From Guillardia theta CCMP2712 (Eukaryota > Protista > Cryptophyta): a DNA stretch of 64,000 bases. The notes under the pieces were generated by a model that ran no database searches, had not been told where the DNA came from, and saw nothing but the letters and a program-made list of their open reading frames with translations. The DNA is taken from contig NW_005434657.1 of assembly GCF_000315625.1 (NCBI RefSeq), positions 846,130 through 910,129 of the forward strand, written 5' to 3'. The translations under genes and the position numbers were made by a program. Shown one piece after another: positions 36,393-42,140 of the stretch (within the stretch, counting starts at the first letter, position 1; every line of letters begins with the position of its first letter).

Positions 36393-37598
36393 AAGGAGGA
36401 GCGGGAGGAGCGGGAGGAGCGGGTAAGGTGGGACAGATCTCCTTACATGTTTTCTCCTTCTCAGAGAGAAGAACTCCCTCAACCTGTTCCAAGTCCTCAG
36501 CCGTCGCATCAAGGAGGAAGGATCGGCCTCTTTGTTCTACGGGCTGAAGACAACGGCTGTCATGGCGCTCCCCTATGCCTTCTTGTTCCACCTGGGTCAA
36601 GGCCTGACTACAGGTTTCTTCTCTCCTCTCTCCTCTCCTCTCCTCTCCTCTCCTCTCCTCTCCTCTCCTCTCCTCTCCTCTCCTCTCCTCTCCTCTCCTC
36701 TCCCTACCCCTTGTTCCCTCCCTTTCTCCCTCTTCCTGTACCCCTCCTCCGCTGAACGCCCTGTAGAACTGGTCGGAGACGAGAGGCTTGTTCGTAAGCT
36801 GCAATGGCTGCCGGGGGCAAGGAGGGTTCTGCAAGACAACTCCTTCATCGACCTTGTCAGCGCTCTCATGGGCAGCACGTTAGCCACGCTCGTCGGGGTA
36901 CCCATGGAGTGCATCAAGCACCGGGTTCAGCTCGGAGGGGGGGTGCTGCACACAGACAAGCGGTTCCTGTCGCTGGAGTACCTGCGCGACATCTACTCGG
37001 GCACTAAGGCGACGCTCTTGAGGCAACGTGCCCTCGATCTCCCCGCCGTCACCAGGCACTGCTGACGTCATCTGGCAGGAACGCCGTCTACAACGTGGTC
37101 CAGTGGACGACTTATCCCATTGCGCTGAAGCTTCTGAGTGGGGAGAGAAGAGGTACCACTTGATGGTTTCGATGAGACGCTGAAGCTGAGCTGGGATAGA
37201 GCTGGGGTCGGTACCGCACTGGAACCAGATGCAAGCAGGCTTCCTCGCTGGCATCGCCACAGCCTTCGCCACTCAGCCATTGGACACGATCAACACGCGC
37301 TTGCAGACGCAGAACCTCAAGATGGTGAGAAATTTCCCGGCTGGCGGCCGGTCACTGACTTGACCCTCTGCTGCAACAGGCCAGCGCTCAGTACGCCGGT
37401 ATCAGGAATTGTGCTATGACCATCATCCGAGAGGAGGTGAAGCTTTCCTCGCCTCGCCTCGCCTCGCTCACTCCTGAGCTTTCACAGGGCGTCTCGGCGT
37501 TATATCGGGGGGTCGTCCCTCGAGCGATGAACTTTGGGATCGGAGCCGCCTGCTTCTTCTTCATGTTTGAGAAGATCAATAAAGCTCTAGCTTCTTGA
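35664..37598 (+). CDS. Mitochondrial carrier family (SLC25) protein with a long N-terminal extension
   Basis: Three Px[D/E]xx[K/R]-type signatures (HPLDTLTT, VPMECIKHRVQ, QPLDTINTRLQ), plus ALYRGVVPRAM…FFMFE. Confidence 0.88.
35799..35870. repeat. (TCA)n microsatellite, encoding poly-Ser in the carrier leader
   Basis: Tandem repeat read directly. Confidence 0.95.
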
Positions 37599-37650
37599 TA
37601 GGCTTCGATGCTCCTGTTGTACTACATTTTGTTACAAGCTATTTACAAAC

Positions 37651-39464
37651 TTATGTCTTCCTCGCAAAGCATGCCACAAAGAATCCGTGCATGAGGTCCT
37701 GTCAGGACGTTGAGCACGACAGAGCAGAGACGAGTCCGTTCTCACCTTGTCCGGGTCTGCTCGAATGCAACACTCTGACAAAGCAGACGGAAAGGAAGCT
37801 GACGGAATTCCTCGTCGCTTCCATTGGGGCAATACATGTTCGAGGTGAAAGCGATCCCCTACCGCCTGCGCATTGTGAGACGCGGACAACAAGATTATGA
37901 GAGAGTATTACGTTCAAGGCCGACTCAACAACTTCCTCGTCCTCCTCCCTACTCTCATGATCACCAGCATGCAAGTTTTCAACGCAATAGCACACCTGTG
38001 GACGGAGCATGTACTGTAAACCACGAACTTGACACTGGGAAACGAGAGCGCGTGGATCAACGCCTTCCTCTGAAAGTCAGAAAGTCCCCGCAAGCGACTG
38101 GGAGAGGCGTCCATCGCATCTCTGAGGACTCCTGAGTTAGAGCAGGAGGGGTCGACAACGATCGCGTCCGCTTGCGATAAGAGCTCGTCGTCGTGCGAGA
38201 CTTGCAACCAGTCTCTCCGATAGACGCGGACTGACGTACAGCCCATTCTCCGCAGCGTCTCCCGAAGCAACTTCTCCCTCTCAGGGGACTTCTCGATGGC
38301 AACAAGAACCCCTTTGTCGGGTTGTAGAGCTACTGCCGCGAGGTGCGAAGCCTGGCTCGACCTGTTTCAGAGGTGCGCACAAGATTCATTTAAGAGTCAA
38401 ACCTTGTTACCAGGAGCAGCGCATGCATCGATCACGAAATTGAACTTTCTTTCAGAATGTAAAGTCCCGGTGCCAATCAGTGCATGAACAGGAAAGGTAC
38501 TTGCTTTGTCCTGCTGGAGAACAAGCCCACTGGTAACGAGGTGATGATTGTGCAGATCAACTTTGTTCCATATCGTCAGAATGTCTGGAATGATTTCATC
38601 TTCCGAGAAGCATCTCTTCTTGTCCTGCATTCCCAGTGGACCCACAGAGACATGATTAACCCTCGTGAAGCCTTCGTCTTCAAGAGATCGGGCCACGGAT
38701 TCTCTTGTAGCTTTGAGCAAGTTAATCCTCAAAAACCTGCCAGGTTTGGATTCAGCCTCTATTACCTTGTGACAAAGGTCAAAACCTCGGATGATTTCGT
38801 ACCGCAGAAGAGTTTTGACTTTTCGAAGACACAAATTCAGCGACCGATTTGTGCCCTAATAACGTTATCAGACCGATATTTCACAAATCAAACCTGGTCG
38901 TACCACTCAGCTGAAGGTACTCTTGAAACTTTTGATGGATCTGAGATTGGTTTCTTCGCAATGACCGCATGACCTCGTGCAAGACGGGATCATGGCCTGA
39001 CTTTGATAACTTTCCACTCCCAAATAGCAAATCAGTAGTGACTATTCTCCGATACAAGGAATCATCCGATGGCAAAGAGTTTCTGATTGTAGGATCTTTG
39101 AATCCATTGTCTTGTACAGGGCTAGCAAGATTCAAAGAATTCAATAATCCGTCGATCACTGACTCTCCATATAACAAAGTTTTTGACGAAAGCGAAAGCG
39201 TTGCTGCTTTTCTTCGAATGTCAGGTTTCAACGAAAGAGATTTCAAACTTCCTCGCTTTCCATGATACCCGTTCAAGACTTTCTTCACATCCTCGTACAG
39301 ATAGGATTGCCTCACTTTATTTTCATCTTGAGATGAAAGTTTGTACACTGCTCTGGAATTTATCCGATCAGTTCTAGGCAGTACATTGCTCTCCCTCCTA
39401 TTTGCAACATAGCAGCTTGAAAGGTACAGTAAAGACTTTGAAAGAGGAACTTTTGAGCAGAGCC
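37651..39464 (-). CDS. NSUN5: NSUN5/Rcm1-type LSU rRNA m5C methyltransferase (apparently the C-terminal part of a fusion with the upstream DUF296 domain)
   Basis: Motifs: LYEDVKKVL…GSLKSL, PGRFLRINLLK, LVLQQDKAS, VIDACAAPGNK|ASHLAA, VDPSCSNSG, LSDFQRKALIHALSFPSV..VVYSTCSVH, LPQWKRRG, HGFFVACF. Stop at 37651. Confidence 0.9.
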
Positions 39465-39511
39465 CTTTGCCTCTGATCAGAGAAATGTTAAAAAACATGC
39501 TTGATTCAGAC

Positions 39512-40331
39512 TTTGGTATCCTTGCCTCGCATCCCCGTCTCCTCCTTTCAAACGGAGCAACCCTCCATGCAGGTATTTGAACAGACGTTCGAGGGCTGTC
39601 CCCTCGTTCTCAGCCGATTCCTGAGGCGAACAGCAGATGGTCAGAATGCACTTGTGAAATTTCAAGTATCACCTGATCCTTTGGCACAACCAACTCTGGA
39701 TAGCCCGTTCGCTGATCGTGAATTCTTGACAGTTTGGTACTTTCAAGCTCTCCCAGCAGGATTTCTGCGGTGGTGAATATGGTAGCATTCATGAGATGGC
39801 CTGATGATTGACTCAGAGAAAAGAAACCTTAGGGCAAGAATGAACAACTTACCTCCAAGCACGTGCCCATCTTTGTCTGCTAATGAAATATGCAGATGCA
39901 TCCCATCATCTTTAGATCACGATTAGCCTTGTGGAAGAAACAAACATAACTTTACCGCAAATTGAGCCAACCAGGCTCACAATTTCGAACTTTTGCTTCA
40001 GAACCTTGATATCATTGGTTGTGCTTGAGCCCGACTTCAAGTAGTTTGCACAGCGAATCGTTGCGCATGAGACTGATCCGACACAAGATAGCACGAACAT
40101 GCTTCTGCCCGAGCATAGCTCCCCCAAGCAGCTTTTCAATTCGTCACCAGGGTGAAGCCTTGTGGCTATGTACTTGAGGTTGCCTCTACTGTACATTTTC
40201 TGCGGGTGGTTGTCTGAGCCCTCGAACGCTGCCACCATTGAGCTCTCTGAGCCTCGGACGAAGACACAAAAGCATACGGCGAGCAAGCAGATATTGCCGG
40301 GTTTCATGGATGCCCTTGTATGCCCCACCAT
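39512..40331 (-). CDS. Signal peptide + PPC/DUF296 domain + LRLKGG linker
   Basis: MKPGNICLLAVCFCVFVRGSES; RLHPGDELKSCL; VLSCVGSV; FEIVSLVGSI; HLHISLADKDGHVLGGHL; TTAEILLGEL; DQRTGYPELVV. Confidence 0.85.
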
Positions 40332-40664
40332 TCTTGCGCTTCCTGTATCCTTCCTCTCCCACCGTCACTTGTTTCCACTTGCTGCTGCTCTTCCTTCTCG
40401 GCTCCTCGTCTGCCCGCGACCTTCTCGTCTTCTCCTCTCACTCTAGTTCCTTCACCTTTGCCCTGATCTGCATTGCGCCCCACCCAAAAAAGAATAACTG
40501 TAAAAGTTTAAAAAAACCTGATAAACAAAAAGAAACAAAAAAAAAGAATCTTGAGAACCCCCCGAGAACATTCGGGTCATGACGATGGTGGGGAGCGATG
40601 CGACGGGCTTGTGAGATGGACATGCTGAAGAATTGACGCTGAAGAGAGGAGCAAGACGTAGACA

Positions 40665-42140
40665 ATGACCTCTTTGAGATGCAGCTTGTGCCATGCTCAG
40701 ATAGAAGGATCATACTTGAAGAAAGATGGCAAGGCATACTGTTCCAAGCACAAAGACCAACTGCTGGAAAAGTGTACGAAGTGCTTAAAACCAATCAAGG
40801 ACAGATACCTCAAGGTGGGCAACGGCGAGATGTATCATCCGGATTGTTTATGCTGCGAAGTCTGCGGAAAGGCGTTCCAAGATTCCAAGTTCACCATCTT
40901 CAACGGAAAGAGGATACACCCCACTTGCTTGCGTTGCTGTGTGCCGGGCTGTGAAGCAACCTTAGACATCAATGGGTTCCGACAAGAAGAAGGGAAGCCA
41001 TACTGTCAGAAGCACTATGATGAAAAGTTCACCAAGAAGTGTGAATTCTGCGGCAATTACCTTCGAAAAGAATTTATTCTTGTTGGTGTGGCTGACAAAC
41101 CAGGCTCGAAAACTCAAAAGAAGCGAGCATGCCATGAATGTTTCAAATGTGTTCAGTGTGGAATGTCCCTCGAAAAACAAAAATTCTTTGTACATGAAGG
41201 GGATTTCTTTTGTGAGAAGGATTACCAAACGAAAGTTTCCCCAAAATGCATGGTCTGCAGCAAGTATGTTGAGAGTTTTATTCAGCACGAGAGTGGAGAG
41301 GTTTACTGTGAAAACGATTATCACGCTAACCCAGTGTGCTTTTCATGTGCACGACTGGTGTTTGGTACGCGCAAACACGCGCTGGACTTGCCAGATGGAC
41401 GTGTGATTTGTGAGAGATGTAACCAAGATGCAGTTTGGAAGTCAGAGGATGCTGCTGCTCCTTTCCGCAAGGCGAAACAGTTCCTAGCGGATGTCCTGGG
41501 CATTGCAGATAAGGAGATCGACTCTGTCAGTTTACGTTTTGTGGAACGAAGTGACGTGGCGGCCTTGCGGGGAGAGCATTCGAGGAGCGTTCATGAGACA
41601 CAGGTCACCGACAAGAAGTCCTACACCATGGGAACGACGATCATCGTAGAGGAGACGGAGAACGACGAGATCGTGAGCCGCCAAGTGGAGGGGATCAACC
41701 TCCTCTCGGGGCAGACAGCCATGCAGCTGACGTCTACGCTAGTCCACGAGCTGATGCATGTCTACCTGTTCTCAAGACGGTTCGGCAAGCTTGATCCTCT
41801 GGTGGAGGAGGGCATCTGCGAGCTAGCTGCTTTCCTATGGCTGGACAAGTTCGCCCCTGAAGGTTAAGGGGTTCGCTCGACCTCTCCTCCTGTCTGACTT
41901 GCGATCCTGCAGGTATGGAACGGAGCATGCGGCTGAATCAGAGGCTGTTCAACAGCTCCAAGGTCTACAAGGCCGGTCTCGCTGCCTCGCAGAAGAGGTC
42001 TGTGCATTCATGTGATCGGGGTCGTCCTGAGGAGTTTCGTCCTCCTTCCCAGGTTCAAGGAGCTTAACGGCGACAAGGATGTAAAGGCGGTGTTCCAGAA
42101 GATCCTCAACGAGGTGAAGGAGCTCAGGACGTTCAGGTGA
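40665..42140 (+). CDS. LIM-domain zinc metallopeptidase, DA1/DAR-like
   Basis: Several LIM-type CxxC…HxxC…CxxC…CxxH/D fingers, a DA1 LIM-like CFSC…LPDGRVICERC unit, HELMH (41745-41759) and VEEGICEL. Two short 3' exons end at TGA 42140. Confidence 0.85.

What the first reader, a model, noticed from the sequence alone, without database searches (positions are those of the whole stretch)
37651..40331. Apparent polyprotein: signal peptide - PPC/DUF296 - LRLKGG - NSUN5 rRNA methyltransferase
Seen: after the DUF296 end (…TGYPELVVPKDQ), a 52-nt GT-AG intron (39672-39621, with a CTGAC branch-like site) joins in frame to ESAENEG…LLRLKGGDG…YQ. A second intron (39511-39465, or 39511-39471) then joins in frame to the NSUN5 exon. 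There is no intergenic space, and the only ATG that could start NSUN5 separately (39498) lies inside that intron. Established: NSUN5/Rcm1 is normally a stand-alone nucleolar enzyme without a signal peptide, and DUF296 is unrelated to it. Inference: two proteins share one targeting signal and are separated at LKGG. If the host is a cryptophyte, this could supply the nucleomorph ribosome-biogenesis machinery from the nucleus.
Basis: partly seen in the sequence, partly recalled or inferred. Interest (0 to 1): 0.8.

Follow-up and report, generated by a model that had tools for sequence, protein, structure and literature searches.

The report
Cryptophyte NSUN5 behind PCC-domain import leader
In the alga Guillardia theta, one spliced gene makes a single 729-residue precursor that joins a signal peptide, a bacterial-type PCC/DUF296 domain, a ubiquitin-tail-like LRLKGG box and a complete rRNA methyltransferase (NSUN5); other cryptophytes share this design, which probably serves the relict endosymbiont compartment, but no cut at the box has been shown.

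Summary
The core observation holds. Spliced RNA-derived contigs from three studies cover the whole stretch as one transcript with ten short introns removed, leaving one ORF of 729 codons (40331..37651, minus strand). The second is not the proposed GT-AG intron but a GC-AG intron, 39525-39473, so the junction reads ...LRLKGGDGDA-R-GKGL....

The genome is Guillardia theta, a cryptophyte. It has two further NSUN5 paralogs without any N-terminal extension, and this is its only PCC locus.

The order of parts is conserved:
- A close relative (about 96% identical DNA) has the same gene. There the intronic ATG is out of frame.
- Cryptomonas-like metagenome contigs encode PCC, linker and NSUN5 N-domain in one uninterrupted exon.
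- A marine cryptophyte has the same order.

In all four lineages the otherwise divergent, disordered linker keeps L-x-G-G, followed by a basic, Ser/Thr-rich stretch.

This scan had already noted, on other DNA of this genome, that periplastid import leaders end in LxLRGG. I confirmed this on two published periplastid proteins (Dre2, Nbp35).

Best reading: a periplastid/nucleomorph-directed NSUN5 whose leader carries a functional PCC domain. Cleavage at the box, and the destination, are inferred and not shown.

The parts
40332..40484 (-). 5' UTR. Spliced contigs begin at 40477/40484 (a third at 40408). It holds one upstream ORF, ATG 40473 to TGA 40438 (11 codons).
   Evidence: the upstream ATG is kept in the relative L005
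40251..40331 (-). Start codon and signal-peptide-like N-terminus (residues 1-27: basic n-region, 12-residue hydrophobic core, small residues at VRG/SES).
   Evidence: kept in L005, in Hanusia phi P0002 and in the Cryptomonas-like contig L006. No dedicated signal-peptide predictor was available.
39673..40169 (-). PCC/DUF296 domain (residues 55-187), split by introns 39955-39910 (46 nt) and 39852-39801 (52 nt). It keeps the H-L-H...G-G-H motif (39898-39796).
   Evidence: PF03479, E 1.8e-9; introns; profile and fold of the homologue P0007 match the bacterial PPC proteins 2p6y, 2hx0, 2dt4, 2h6l; 10 synonymous against 5 non-synonymous changes versus L005
39621..39672 (-). If retained, the frame stops at 39612-39610.
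39526..39620 (-). Exon 4: linker (residues 188-218 plus two bases), with no Pfam family.
   Evidence: one silent change versus L005; unique in the genome
39540..39557 (-). LRLKGG box (residues 209-214), one residue different from ubiquitin's tail LRLRGG.
   Evidence: L-x-G-G is kept in four lineages; it lies in a disordered stretch of the P0007 model; the same kind of box ends the leaders of periplastid Dre2 and Nbp35
39473..39525 (-). Intron 4, GC..AG, 53 nt. It holds ATG 39498 and the stop at 39479-39477.
   Evidence: (the same joint in three runs). In L005 a 1-nt deletion puts the ATG out of frame with exon 5.
39313..39539 (-). Basic, Ser/Thr-rich stretch after the box (residues 215-272, net charge +6), interrupted by intron 4.
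   Evidence: the equivalent stretches of P0005 and P0007 have net charge +5 and +6
37654..39312 (-). NSUN5 proper (residues 273-729): N-domain, ferredoxin-like domain and RsmB/F methyltransferase. Its introns are 38903-38856, 38785-38737, 38402-38352, 37995-37949, 37911-37866 and 37745-37699. Motif I DACAAPGNK is at 38429-38403, motif IV DPSCSNSG at 38153-38130, and motif VI TCS at 38012-37998.
   Evidence: canonical NSUN5 proteins start where this one reads RQSYLYED (alignment)
37613..37653 (-). Stop codon TAA (37653-37651) and a short 3' UTR, seen as far as 37613.
   Evidence: The convergent mitochondrial-carrier gene on the plus strand has its stop codon ending at 37598.

Best explanation
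This is one nuclear gene of Guillardia theta with 11 coding exons. It encodes a 729-residue precursor made of five parts in order: a signal peptide, a bacterial-type PCC/DUF296 domain, a disordered linker ending in the ubiquitin-tail-like box LRLKGG, a basic Ser/Thr-rich stretch, and a complete NSUN5-type 25S/28S rRNA cytosine-C5 methyltransferase.

It is the third, cryptophyte-specific NSUN5 paralog; the other two have no extension.

Proposed mechanism:
1. The signal peptide takes the precursor into the ER lumen, which in these algae is continuous with the outermost plastid membrane.
2. The precursor is passed on to the periplastid compartment.
3. The box, which ends the import leaders of other periplastid proteins of this alga, marks where the N-terminal part is removed.
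4. This frees NSUN5, which acts on the nucleomorph-encoded large-subunit rRNA. The PCC domain arrives as a second, co-imported product.

Shown: the single spliced mRNA and ORF, the domain content, conservation of the order of parts and of the box, and the signal-less paralogs.

Inferred, with my estimates: signal-peptide function 0.8; periplastid/nucleomorph destination 0.65; cleavage at the box 0.5; the substrate rRNA.
For: - One transcript and one ORF: three spliced contigs from three studies, with arithmetic and translation checked.
- Domains and catalytic motifs are intact.
- The genome is G. theta (87,145,349 bases in 669 contigs; GUITHDRAFT protein hit).
- There are three NSUN5 loci and one PCC locus. 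The C59 paralog starts at the canonical N-terminus, and the C4 paralog also shows no leader.
- The fusion is conserved. L005 shares synteny and exon structure, with substitution rates of 0.034 in exons against 0.074 in introns, exon indels in frame, and the intronic ATG out of frame. P0005 and P0007 hold PCC, linker and NSUN5_N in one genomic ORF. The marine contigs L009 and L011-L014 have the same order.
- These sequences form one clade with Cryptomonas paramecium (98 SH-aLRT).
- L-x-G-G is kept in all four linkers. The joint chance from composition-preserving shuffles is 1.5e-5. The box sits in a stretch with pLDDT about 30, between two confident domains.
- The box is a leader end elsewhere. 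Periplastid Dre2 and Nbp35, listed as PPC factors in PMC6105332, have a signal peptide and a basic spacer ending in ...LCLRGG and ...IRLRGG just before the conserved protein. The second Dre2 locus, which I take to be the host cytosolic copy, has none.
- A further example turned up in a random 200 kb sample.
- The residue after the box is D, S, D or A in the four lineages, never aromatic or Leu. This fits the published rule for periplastid leaders (PMC6105332).
Against: - No protein-level data exist: neither cleavage nor localisation has been seen.
- In ordinary periplastid leaders the basic transit-peptide-like spacer lies between the signal peptide and the box. Here a folded domain and a neutral linker lie there, and the basic stretch comes after the box, so the import logic is not the standard one.
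- After signal-peptide removal the new N-terminus is not transit-peptide-like (net charge about +1 over 29 residues in G. theta; almost no spacer in L006).
- K, C or R at the position before GG, and weak conservation of the residue six before the cut, make this a looser box than LxLRGG.
- Periplastid Nar1 has a signal peptide but no visible box in its first exon, so the box is not universal.
- The Cryptomonas paramecium fragment P0009 shows no box in the 45 residues before the NSUN5 start; it may be truncated.
- Contigs cannot exclude minor isoforms, and the raw RNA run gave only 12 reads.
- The signal peptide was judged by hydropathy only.
Confidence: 0.5

Rival explanations
1. The protein is a stable two-domain enzyme and is never cut. 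The PCC domain serves NSUN5 as a nucleic-acid-binding, metal-binding or oligomerising accessory. The G/R-rich motif (LxGG...RG) is a flexible RNA-binding or nucleolar-type linker, not a processing site. The destination may still be the periplastid compartment.
For: PCC and NSUN5 have stayed joined in every cryptophyte lineage sampled, in one exon in the Cryptomonas-like contigs. The genome has no free-standing PCC gene. PCC proteins are annotated as putative DNA-binding proteins and plant AHL proteins pair the domain with basic AT-hooks. A motif R-G-[KL] follows the box in three lineages.
Against: The same box sits exactly at the leader/mature boundary of unrelated periplastid proteins, which a linker role does not explain. 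The linker is long, disordered and unconserved apart from the box. The AlphaFold model shows no contact between the two domains (pTM 0.46).
Confidence: 0.25
2. The precursor enters the secretory pathway but does not go to the periplastid compartment. It is an ER-lumenal, secreted or membrane-tethered protein, and the basic stretch released after cleavage acts as a nuclear or nucleolar signal for the host nucleus.
For: There is no transit-peptide-like sequence directly after the signal peptide. The basic stretch after the box resembles a nuclear localisation signal as much as a transit peptide.
Against: An rRNA methyltransferase has no known substrate in the ER lumen or outside the cell. Two leaderless NSUN5 paralogs already exist for the host nucleolus. 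The box is shared with published periplastid proteins.
Confidence: 0.1
3. These are two genes, or a bicistronic message. The PCC protein ends at the stop at 39479-39477 (intron 4 retained) or 39612-39610 (intron 3 retained), and NSUN5 is translated on its own from ATG 39498.
For: In this strain ATG 39498 is in frame with exon 5. GC-AG introns have weak donor sites. Contigs drop rare isoforms.
Against: All three assemblies show only the spliced form. In the close relative L005 a 1-nt deletion puts that ATG out of frame, with an immediate stop. After splicing, the next in-frame Met inside NSUN5 lies deep in the N-domain. The Cryptomonas-like genes have no intron and no stop between PCC and NSUN5.
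Confidence: 0.04
4. The finding is an artefact: a chimeric transcript assembly of two overlapping neighbour genes, or a genome mis-assembly.
For: Logan contigs are assembled from short words, and the tool warns that a contig spanning two genes does not prove a single transcript.
Against: The splice joints E3-E4 and E4-E5 must be present in reads, and exon 4 is only 95 nt. The same structure appears in three studies, in an independent metagenome contig and as a single exon in other species.
Confidence: 0.01

Closest known systems
NSUN5 / Rcm1 (25S/28S rRNA cytosine-C5 methyltransferase)
   Same: Residues 273-729 are colinear with canonical NSUN5 from its first residues. The ferredoxin-like domain, the RsmB/F domain, motif I and both catalytic Cys motifs are present.
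   Different: It has a 272-residue N-terminal extension holding a signal peptide, a PCC domain and the box. The N-domain is so diverged that Pfam misses it in the window. It is a third paralog found only in cryptophyte-like sequences.
Bipartite targeting signals of periplastid proteins in cryptophytes and diatoms (signal peptide plus transit-peptide-like region; PMC6105332)
   Same: There is a signal peptide at the N-terminus. The residue that would begin the mature part is non-aromatic and not Leu. The leader ends in the same ubiquitin-tail-like box as G. theta periplastid Dre2 and Nbp35.
   Different: About 185 residues, including a folded and selectively maintained domain, lie between the signal peptide and the box, compared with about 30 basic residues in the usual case. 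The basic Ser/Thr-rich stretch follows the box instead of preceding it.
Ubiquitin-fusion ribosomal proteins (Ub-eL40, Ub-eS31), cut after LRLRGG by deubiquitinases (my own knowledge)
   Same: A hexapeptide one residue away from LRLRGG is followed by a basic protein of the ribosome-making apparatus. The N-terminal moiety would be released with a free ...GG end.
   Different: There is no ubiquitin fold before the box. Pfam finds nothing in the linker and the model shows two helices plus disorder. What lies upstream is a PCC domain.
Plastid-targeted polyproteins of euglenids and dinoflagellates (LHC, RuBisCO small subunit; PMC4938576 and PMC3480386 listed, otherwise my own knowledge)
   Same: One N-terminal targeting signal would serve more than one mature protein, separated at short conserved linkers after import.
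   Different: Those are tandem copies of the same or related proteins joined by a repeated decapeptide. Here two unrelated domains are joined once, the linker exon is unique in the genome, and cleavage is unproven.
Bacterial and archaeal PPC/DUF296 proteins (VCA0587 2p6y, Salmonella 2hx0, PH0802 2dt4, AF0104 2h6l) and plant AHL proteins
   Same: The fold and sequence family are the same. Identity to stand-alone metagenomic, apparently bacterial, homologues is 35-47%. The H-x-H...GGH motif is kept.
   Different: This one is eukaryotic, interrupted by introns, preceded by a signal peptide and fused to a methyltransferase. Of 80 metagenomic PCC loci fetched, none carries NSUN5.

Membership tests
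NSUN5/Rcm1 | NSUN5 ferredoxin-like domain (PF21148) | tested here: met
   51.7 bits, cut-off 24.5
NSUN5/Rcm1 | RsmB/F-type SAM methyltransferase domain (PF01189), with motif I and the motif IV and VI cysteines | tested here: met
   33.3 bits, cut-off 27, on one exon alone. DACAAPGNK, DPSCSNSG and TCS were read in the translation.
NSUN5/Rcm1 | NSUN5 N-terminal domain (PF21153) | tested here: inconclusive
   No Pfam hit on exon 5. Only sub-threshold hits in P0005 and P0007 (17.6-17.8 bits, cut-off 27.8). The alignment with canonical N-termini is colinear, and the P0007 model folds confidently there.
NSUN5/Rcm1 | Methylates the conserved cytosine of large-subunit rRNA (yeast C2278) | not testable with these tools
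   Needs bisulfite or direct RNA sequencing of host and nucleomorph 28S rRNA.
PCC/PPC (DUF296, PF03479) | Profile match above the curated cut-off, and the PPC fold | tested here: met
   38.4 bits, cut-off 25, on exon 1 alone. The homologue P0007 scores 74.6 bits. Its model matches 2hx0, 2p6y and 2dt4 with probability 1.00 and target TM 0.67-0.74.
Periplastid bipartite targeting signal (cryptophyte type) | N-terminal signal peptide | tested here: inconclusive
   The hydropathy and charge pattern fit and are conserved in four lineages. No signal-peptide predictor was available.
Periplastid bipartite targeting signal (cryptophyte type) | Transit-peptide-like region directly after the signal peptide | tested here: not met
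   Residues 26-54 have net charge +1 and run straight into the PCC domain. L006 has almost no spacer.
Periplastid bipartite targeting signal (cryptophyte type) | First residue of the part following the cut is neither aromatic nor Leu (PMC6105332) | tested here: met
   Ser after the likely signal-peptidase sites. D, S, D and A follow the box in the four lineages.
Ubiquitin-tail box at the end of periplastid leaders (noted by this scan, not found in the literature) | L-x-L-R-G-G at the border between leader and conserved mature protein | tested here: inconclusive
   LRLKGG fits with K in place of R, but 58 further non-conserved residues precede the canonical NSUN5 start. The box is present in Dre2 and Nbp35, was not seen in Nar1, and one more case was found in 200 kb.
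Ubiquitin-fusion precursor | A ubiquitin (beta-grasp) fold immediately before the GG | tested here: not met
   No Pfam family in the linkers of four lineages, even at E up to 10. The model shows helices and disorder.
Euglenid/dinoflagellate-type plastid polyprotein | Repeated mature units separated by a repeated conserved linker | tested here: not met
   There are two unrelated units and one linker, and exon 4 has no second copy in the genome.

The most novel reading that the evidence does not exclude
The ubiquitin-tail box works as an internal processing site. A periplastid deubiquitinase-like protease cuts a heterologous precursor, so one signal peptide delivers two unrelated proteins to the relict endosymbiont cytoplasm: a PCC-domain protein left with a free ...LRLKGG end, and an NSUN5 for nucleomorph ribosomes. 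This would be the first heterologous import polyprotein in a red-lineage complex plastid. It would also be a natural substrate for finding the unknown leader peptidase.
Probability: 0.3. Interest if true: 0.85.

Novelty: new variant of a known kind. Interest (0 to 1): 0.66.

Why it matters
How proteins reach the periplastid compartment and nucleomorph, and where and by what enzyme their leaders are removed, is still unresolved for red-lineage complex plastids. This gene is a natural experiment. A leader-end box lies 185 residues from the signal peptide, behind a folded and conserved domain, and in front of an enzyme whose only sensible substrate inside the plastid complex is the nucleomorph's own large-subunit rRNA.

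- If the precursor is cut at the box, it gives a clean assay: two products of distinct size, and a GG-to-AA mutant as a control. It would also show that import leaders can carry cargo.
- If it is not cut, it is a new domain architecture for an rRNA methyltransferase.

Either way it identifies which of the three NSUN5 genes probably serves the endosymbiont-derived ribosomes.

Tried and rejected
- Separate NSUN5 start at ATG 39498: rejected. The ATG is spliced out in all contigs and is out of frame in L005.
- Raw RNA reads (run X21): only 12 reads mapped to the region, so they say nothing about isoforms or transcript ends.
- Ubiquitin or any other known domain in the linker: none found.
- A repeated linker cassette elsewhere in the genome: none found.
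- More fused homologues:
  - The search of 1.84 billion representative proteins with exon 5 gave only 6 hits.
  - The JGI metagenome scan returned only stand-alone, bacterial-type PCC genes.
  - The ESM Atlas has no cluster combining PCC and NSUN5 (one search failed).
  - Contigs of the P0005 cluster all end just after the fused exon, so their catalytic part could not be read.
  - Contigs of P0007 and P0003 had no DNA available.
- Red-algal versus host origin: not resolved. No named red-algal NSUN5 came back from the two word-index searches. The quick tree places the fused clade beside the canonical cryptophyte clade (SH-aLRT 90) and puts the C4 paralog on a very long branch.
The count of 3 against 0-1 for permuted motifs is only suggestive, and one of the three was included on purpose.
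- Literature: no paper in the library links NSUN5/Rcm1 to cryptophytes, or 'LRGG' to Guillardia. The G. theta genome paper is not held. PMC6105332 has no supplement held.
- Joined protein: it was not sent to any search, family, fold or complex tool. Exons were searched by reference.
Full report
**Scope and limits.** I read 37300-40800 on both strands, laid public reads on it, and compared it with the rest of the same genome and with related contigs. The spliced protein has no reference, so I searched it exon by exon, by reference. The joined 729-residue sequence was built only inside scripts, from window.fa. There it served the frame check, charge statistics, coordinates and two trees. It was never sent to a database, family, fold or complex tool.

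**Transcript.** The run search listed RNA-like runs holding about 0.65 of the sampled words of the stretch, the share expected if introns are missing.
- I laid four runs. Three assemblies from three different studies (X1, X2, X5) each gave one minus-strand contig of 2328, 2237 and 2305 nt. These start at 40477, 40484 and 40408 and reach as far as 37613.
- All three show the same ten joints.
- On the minus strand the introns are 39955-39910, 39852-39801, 39672-39621, 39525-39473, 38903-38856, 38785-38737, 38402-38352, 37995-37949, 37911-37866 and 37745-37699.
- They are 46-53 nt long. All are GT..AG except the fourth, which is GC..AG.
- The runs are only guessed to be RNA. But a contig that lacks ten introns at exact splice borders must derive from spliced RNA, and the genome has a single PCC locus, so a processed DNA copy is not the source.
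- The one true raw-read RNA run gave only 12 reads and says nothing about ends or minor isoforms.

**Gene model.** The coding exons add up to 2190 nt, which is 729 codons plus TAA at 37653-37651, with no internal stop.
- The second is not. The real donor is GC at 39525 and the acceptor is AG at 39473. The protein therefore reads ...LLRLKGGDGDA, then an Arg codon split across the joint, then GKGLCSK....
- ATG 39498 and the stop at 39479-39477 both lie inside this intron.
- The 5' UTR carries one 11-codon upstream ORF.

**Content of the precursor.**
- Residues 1-27 look like a signal peptide. The n-region has two basic residues. The 12-residue core has mean hydropathy 3.3, the most hydrophobic window of the whole protein.
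- Exon 1 alone passes the Pfam threshold for PCC/DUF296.
- The PCC domain ends at residue 187.
- Residues 188-214 form a linker with no known family, ending in LRLKGG (39557-39540).
- Residues 215-272 are basic (net +6) and 18% Ser/Thr.
- From residue 273 (RQSYLYED) the protein is colinear with canonical NSUN5, whose proteins begin exactly there.
- The NSUN5 part has the ferredoxin-like domain, the RsmB/F domain, motif I and both catalytic cysteine motifs.

**Organism and paralogs.**
- The assembly has 87,145,349 bases in 669 contigs. This fits what I recall of the published Guillardia theta CCMP2712 nuclear assembly.
- A paralogous locus hits GUITHDRAFT_112468 of Guillardia theta CCMP2712 at 93% identity.
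- The genome has three NSUN5 loci and only one PCC locus.
- The contig-59 copy begins MYPLYQDA..., at the canonical N-terminus, and has a Hanusia phi orthologue.
- The contig-4 copy also shows no leader.

**Conservation of the fusion.**

1. *Close relative.* A 4788-nt metagenome contig (L005) is about 96% identical, with the same neighbour gene (DA1-like/LIM) and the same exon structure.
   - Substitutions per site are 0.034 in exons, 0.074 in introns and 0.081 in UTRs.
   - The only exon indel is 18 nt, in frame; the intron indels are 1 nt each.
   - The 27 linker codons are identical.
   - A 1-nt deletion in intron 4 puts the intronic ATG out of frame, with a stop six codons later. An independent NSUN5 start is therefore not conserved.
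2. *Hanusia phi.* It has a signal-peptide-bearing PCC fragment and a fragment of this NSUN5 paralog. Their names carry the same transcript number. I infer one transcript from the names only.
3. *Cryptomonas-like contigs.* The search of 1.84 billion representatives with exon 5 returned only six proteins.
   - Two of them, P0005 (a 15-member cluster from lake metagenomes) and P0007, hold the PCC domain, a linker and the NSUN5 N-domain in one uninterrupted genomic ORF.
   - The contig L006 adds an upstream exon with a short hydrophobic N-terminus preceded by RRGR.
   - This supports a fused protein without relying on any splicing call.
4. *Marine contigs.* L009 and L011-L014 carry PCC exons, a linker ORF, the NSUN5 N-domain and a 424-residue NSUN5 ORF, in that order.
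   - That ORF is 46% identical to this paralog over 209 residues. Its matches to the other two paralogs are 29-35% over their main stretches.
5. *Tree of the N-domain.* All of these, plus a Cryptomonas paramecium fragment, form one clade (98 SH-aLRT). The marine sequence groups with Guillardia and Hanusia (97). The marine organism is therefore most likely a cryptophyte.
6. *Outside cryptophytes.* None of 80 metagenomic PCC loci, which are bacterial in type, carries NSUN5.

**The box.** The linkers are otherwise unalignable, yet each keeps L-x-G-G:
- LRLKGG|DG in G. theta
- GLKGG|SG in the marine contigs
- RLCGG|DS in P0007
- ALRGG|AS in P0005

- Composition-preserving shuffles give 0.097, 0.038, 0.013 and 0.30 for at least one such motif, a product of 1.5e-5. 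Because the linkers are homologous, this measures constraint and not independent origin.
- In three of the lineages (G. theta, P0005, P0007) a basic Ser/Thr-rich stretch follows the box. In the marine contig the residues after the box are Arg-rich, but their charge was not computed.
- In an AlphaFold model of P0007, the PCC domain and the NSUN5 N-domain are confident (pLDDT about 90). Residues 159-194, which hold LCGG at 168-171, have pLDDT about 30.
- Pfam finds nothing in any of the linkers, and in particular no ubiquitin.

**What the box may be.** The notes of this scan changed my reading here. They report many times, on other DNA of this genome, that leaders of putative periplastid proteins end in a ubiquitin-tail-like LxLRGG. 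These are unchecked notes, so I tested the claim on a published set. PMC6105332 lists nucleus-encoded periplastid versions of Nbp35, Dre2, Nar1 and others in G. theta.
- *Dre2.* One of the two Dre2 loci encodes a signal peptide and a 31-residue basic spacer ending in ...LCLRGG, and then the mature protein. The other locus, which I take to be the host cytosolic copy, has no such motif.
- *Nbp35.* A ParA-family locus encodes a signal peptide, an intron and a spacer ending ...FIRLRGG|SS, directly before the Nbp35 cysteine motif.
- *Nar1.* It has a signal peptide, but I saw no box in its first exon.
- *Random sample.* In 283 kb of this genome, signal-peptide-like ORFs with [LIVM]RGG numbered three, against 0-1 for each of eight permuted motifs. 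One of the three was Dre2, included on purpose. Another is a clear new case...SRLSLRGG|SSD.
- *Literature.* No paper in the library holds both 'LRGG' and 'Guillardia'.

I therefore accept, with moderate confidence, that the box marks the end of periplastid leaders. That it is the cut site has not been shown by anyone.

**Interpretation.**
- *Firm part.* This is one conserved cryptophyte gene for a precursor with the order signal peptide, PCC domain, box, basic stretch, NSUN5.
- *Likely part (about 0.65).* This paralog serves the endosymbiont-derived compartment. It is the only one of the three with a signal peptide, it carries the periplastid box, and the residue after the box is never aromatic or Leu (rule in PMC6105332). 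Text searches of the 2019 re-evaluation of nucleomorph proteomes found no NSUN-type enzyme.
- *Open part (about 0.5).* Cleavage at the box.
  - In favour: the box is the only conserved element of a disordered linker, and it sits at leader/mature borders elsewhere.
  - Also in favour of two products: the PCC domain is under purifying selection (10 synonymous against 5 non-synonymous changes) and keeps its H-x-H...GGH motif. It therefore looks like a product and not a mere spacer.
  - Against the standard import logic: there is no transit-peptide-like stretch between the signal peptide and the PCC domain. The basic stretch comes after the box, the reverse of Dre2 and Nbp35.
  - The never-cut two-domain enzyme remains a serious rival.

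**Origin.** A quick tree of 38 NSUN5 sequences places this clade (93) next to the canonical cryptophyte clade (90), and both next to green plants (96). The contig-4 copy sits on a very long branch. No red-algal sequence could be sampled, so the question of red-algal versus host origin stays open. A duplication within cryptophytes followed by retargeting is at least as likely.

**Comparison with what is known.**
- The enzyme is a member of NSUN5/Rcm1.
- The N-terminal domain is a member of PCC/DUF296, of the bacterial type.
- The whole works like a periplastid preprotein but fails one defining feature, the transit-peptide-like region directly after the signal peptide.
- It resembles a ubiquitin-fusion ribosomal protein only in the hexapeptide.
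- It resembles euglenid and dinoflagellate polyproteins only in the idea of one signal serving several products.
- I found no description of a PCC-NSUN5 architecture.

**Verdict.** It is a new variant of known kinds, and its central inference can be tested directly.

Noticed in passing
window 40438-40473 (minus strand): An 11-codon upstream ORF lies in the 5' UTR of the fused gene. Its ATG is kept in the relative L005, where indels change the peptide but an ORF remains.
   Followed up: partly
window 37598-37651: The convergent mitochondrial-carrier gene (plus strand, Pfam Mito_carr) has its stop codon ending at 37598, only 52 nt from the NSUN5 stop. An NSUN5 contig reaches 37613, so the two 3' UTRs nearly abut or overlap.
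   Followed up: partly
window 40484-40665: A divergent neighbour, a LIM plus DA1-like peptidase gene, starts at ATG 40665 on the plus strand. Its contigs reach down to 40564-40588, while the fused gene's contigs start at 40477-40484. The shared promoter region is therefore only about 80-100 nt.
   Followed up: partly
window 39473-39525 and L005: The GC-AG donor of intron 4 is conserved in the relative. GC donors are often linked to regulated retention. Retention here would give a PCC-only protein that ends after the box.
   Followed up: no
L097 (G000:C8:981773-984841), minus strand: Periplastid Dre2 has a signal peptide and a basic spacer ending ...LCLRGG, then the mature protein. The other Dre2 locus on C16 (L096), which I take to be the host copy, has no such motif.
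   Followed up: yes
L125 (G000:C39:405360-408668), plus strand, 963-1190: The periplastid Nbp35 candidate has a signal peptide, a 57-nt intron and a spacer ending ...FIRLRGG|SS, before the N-terminal cysteine motif.
   Followed up: yes
L111 (G000:C1:260001-270000), minus strand, from 4919: An unannotated ORF has a signal peptide and a basic Ser/Thr-rich spacer ending ...SRLSLRGG, followed by an acidic stretch. It is another leader of the same type, found in a random sample.
   Followed up: no
L100 (G000:C33:6078-9401), plus strand, 935-1147: The Nar1 locus that has a signal peptide shows no LRGG-type box in its first exon. This is either an exception, or the box lies across an intron.
   Followed up: partly
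L002 (G000:C4:1188330-1191605), minus strand: The third NSUN5 paralog has an acidic insert in the methyltransferase domain and a very long branch in the tree. Its role is unknown.
   Followed up: partly
window 37439-37474: A short (GAGGC)n-like repeat lies inside the carrier gene region. The reads tool skipped it as a repeat.
   Followed up: no
P0003 / P0024 (contigs of 1449 and 1371 nt, no DNA available): A further eukaryote-type PCC fragment, 54% identical to the marine cryptophyte PCC, is followed on its contig by a 200-305-residue gene of unknown content. It may be another fused gene.
   Followed up: no
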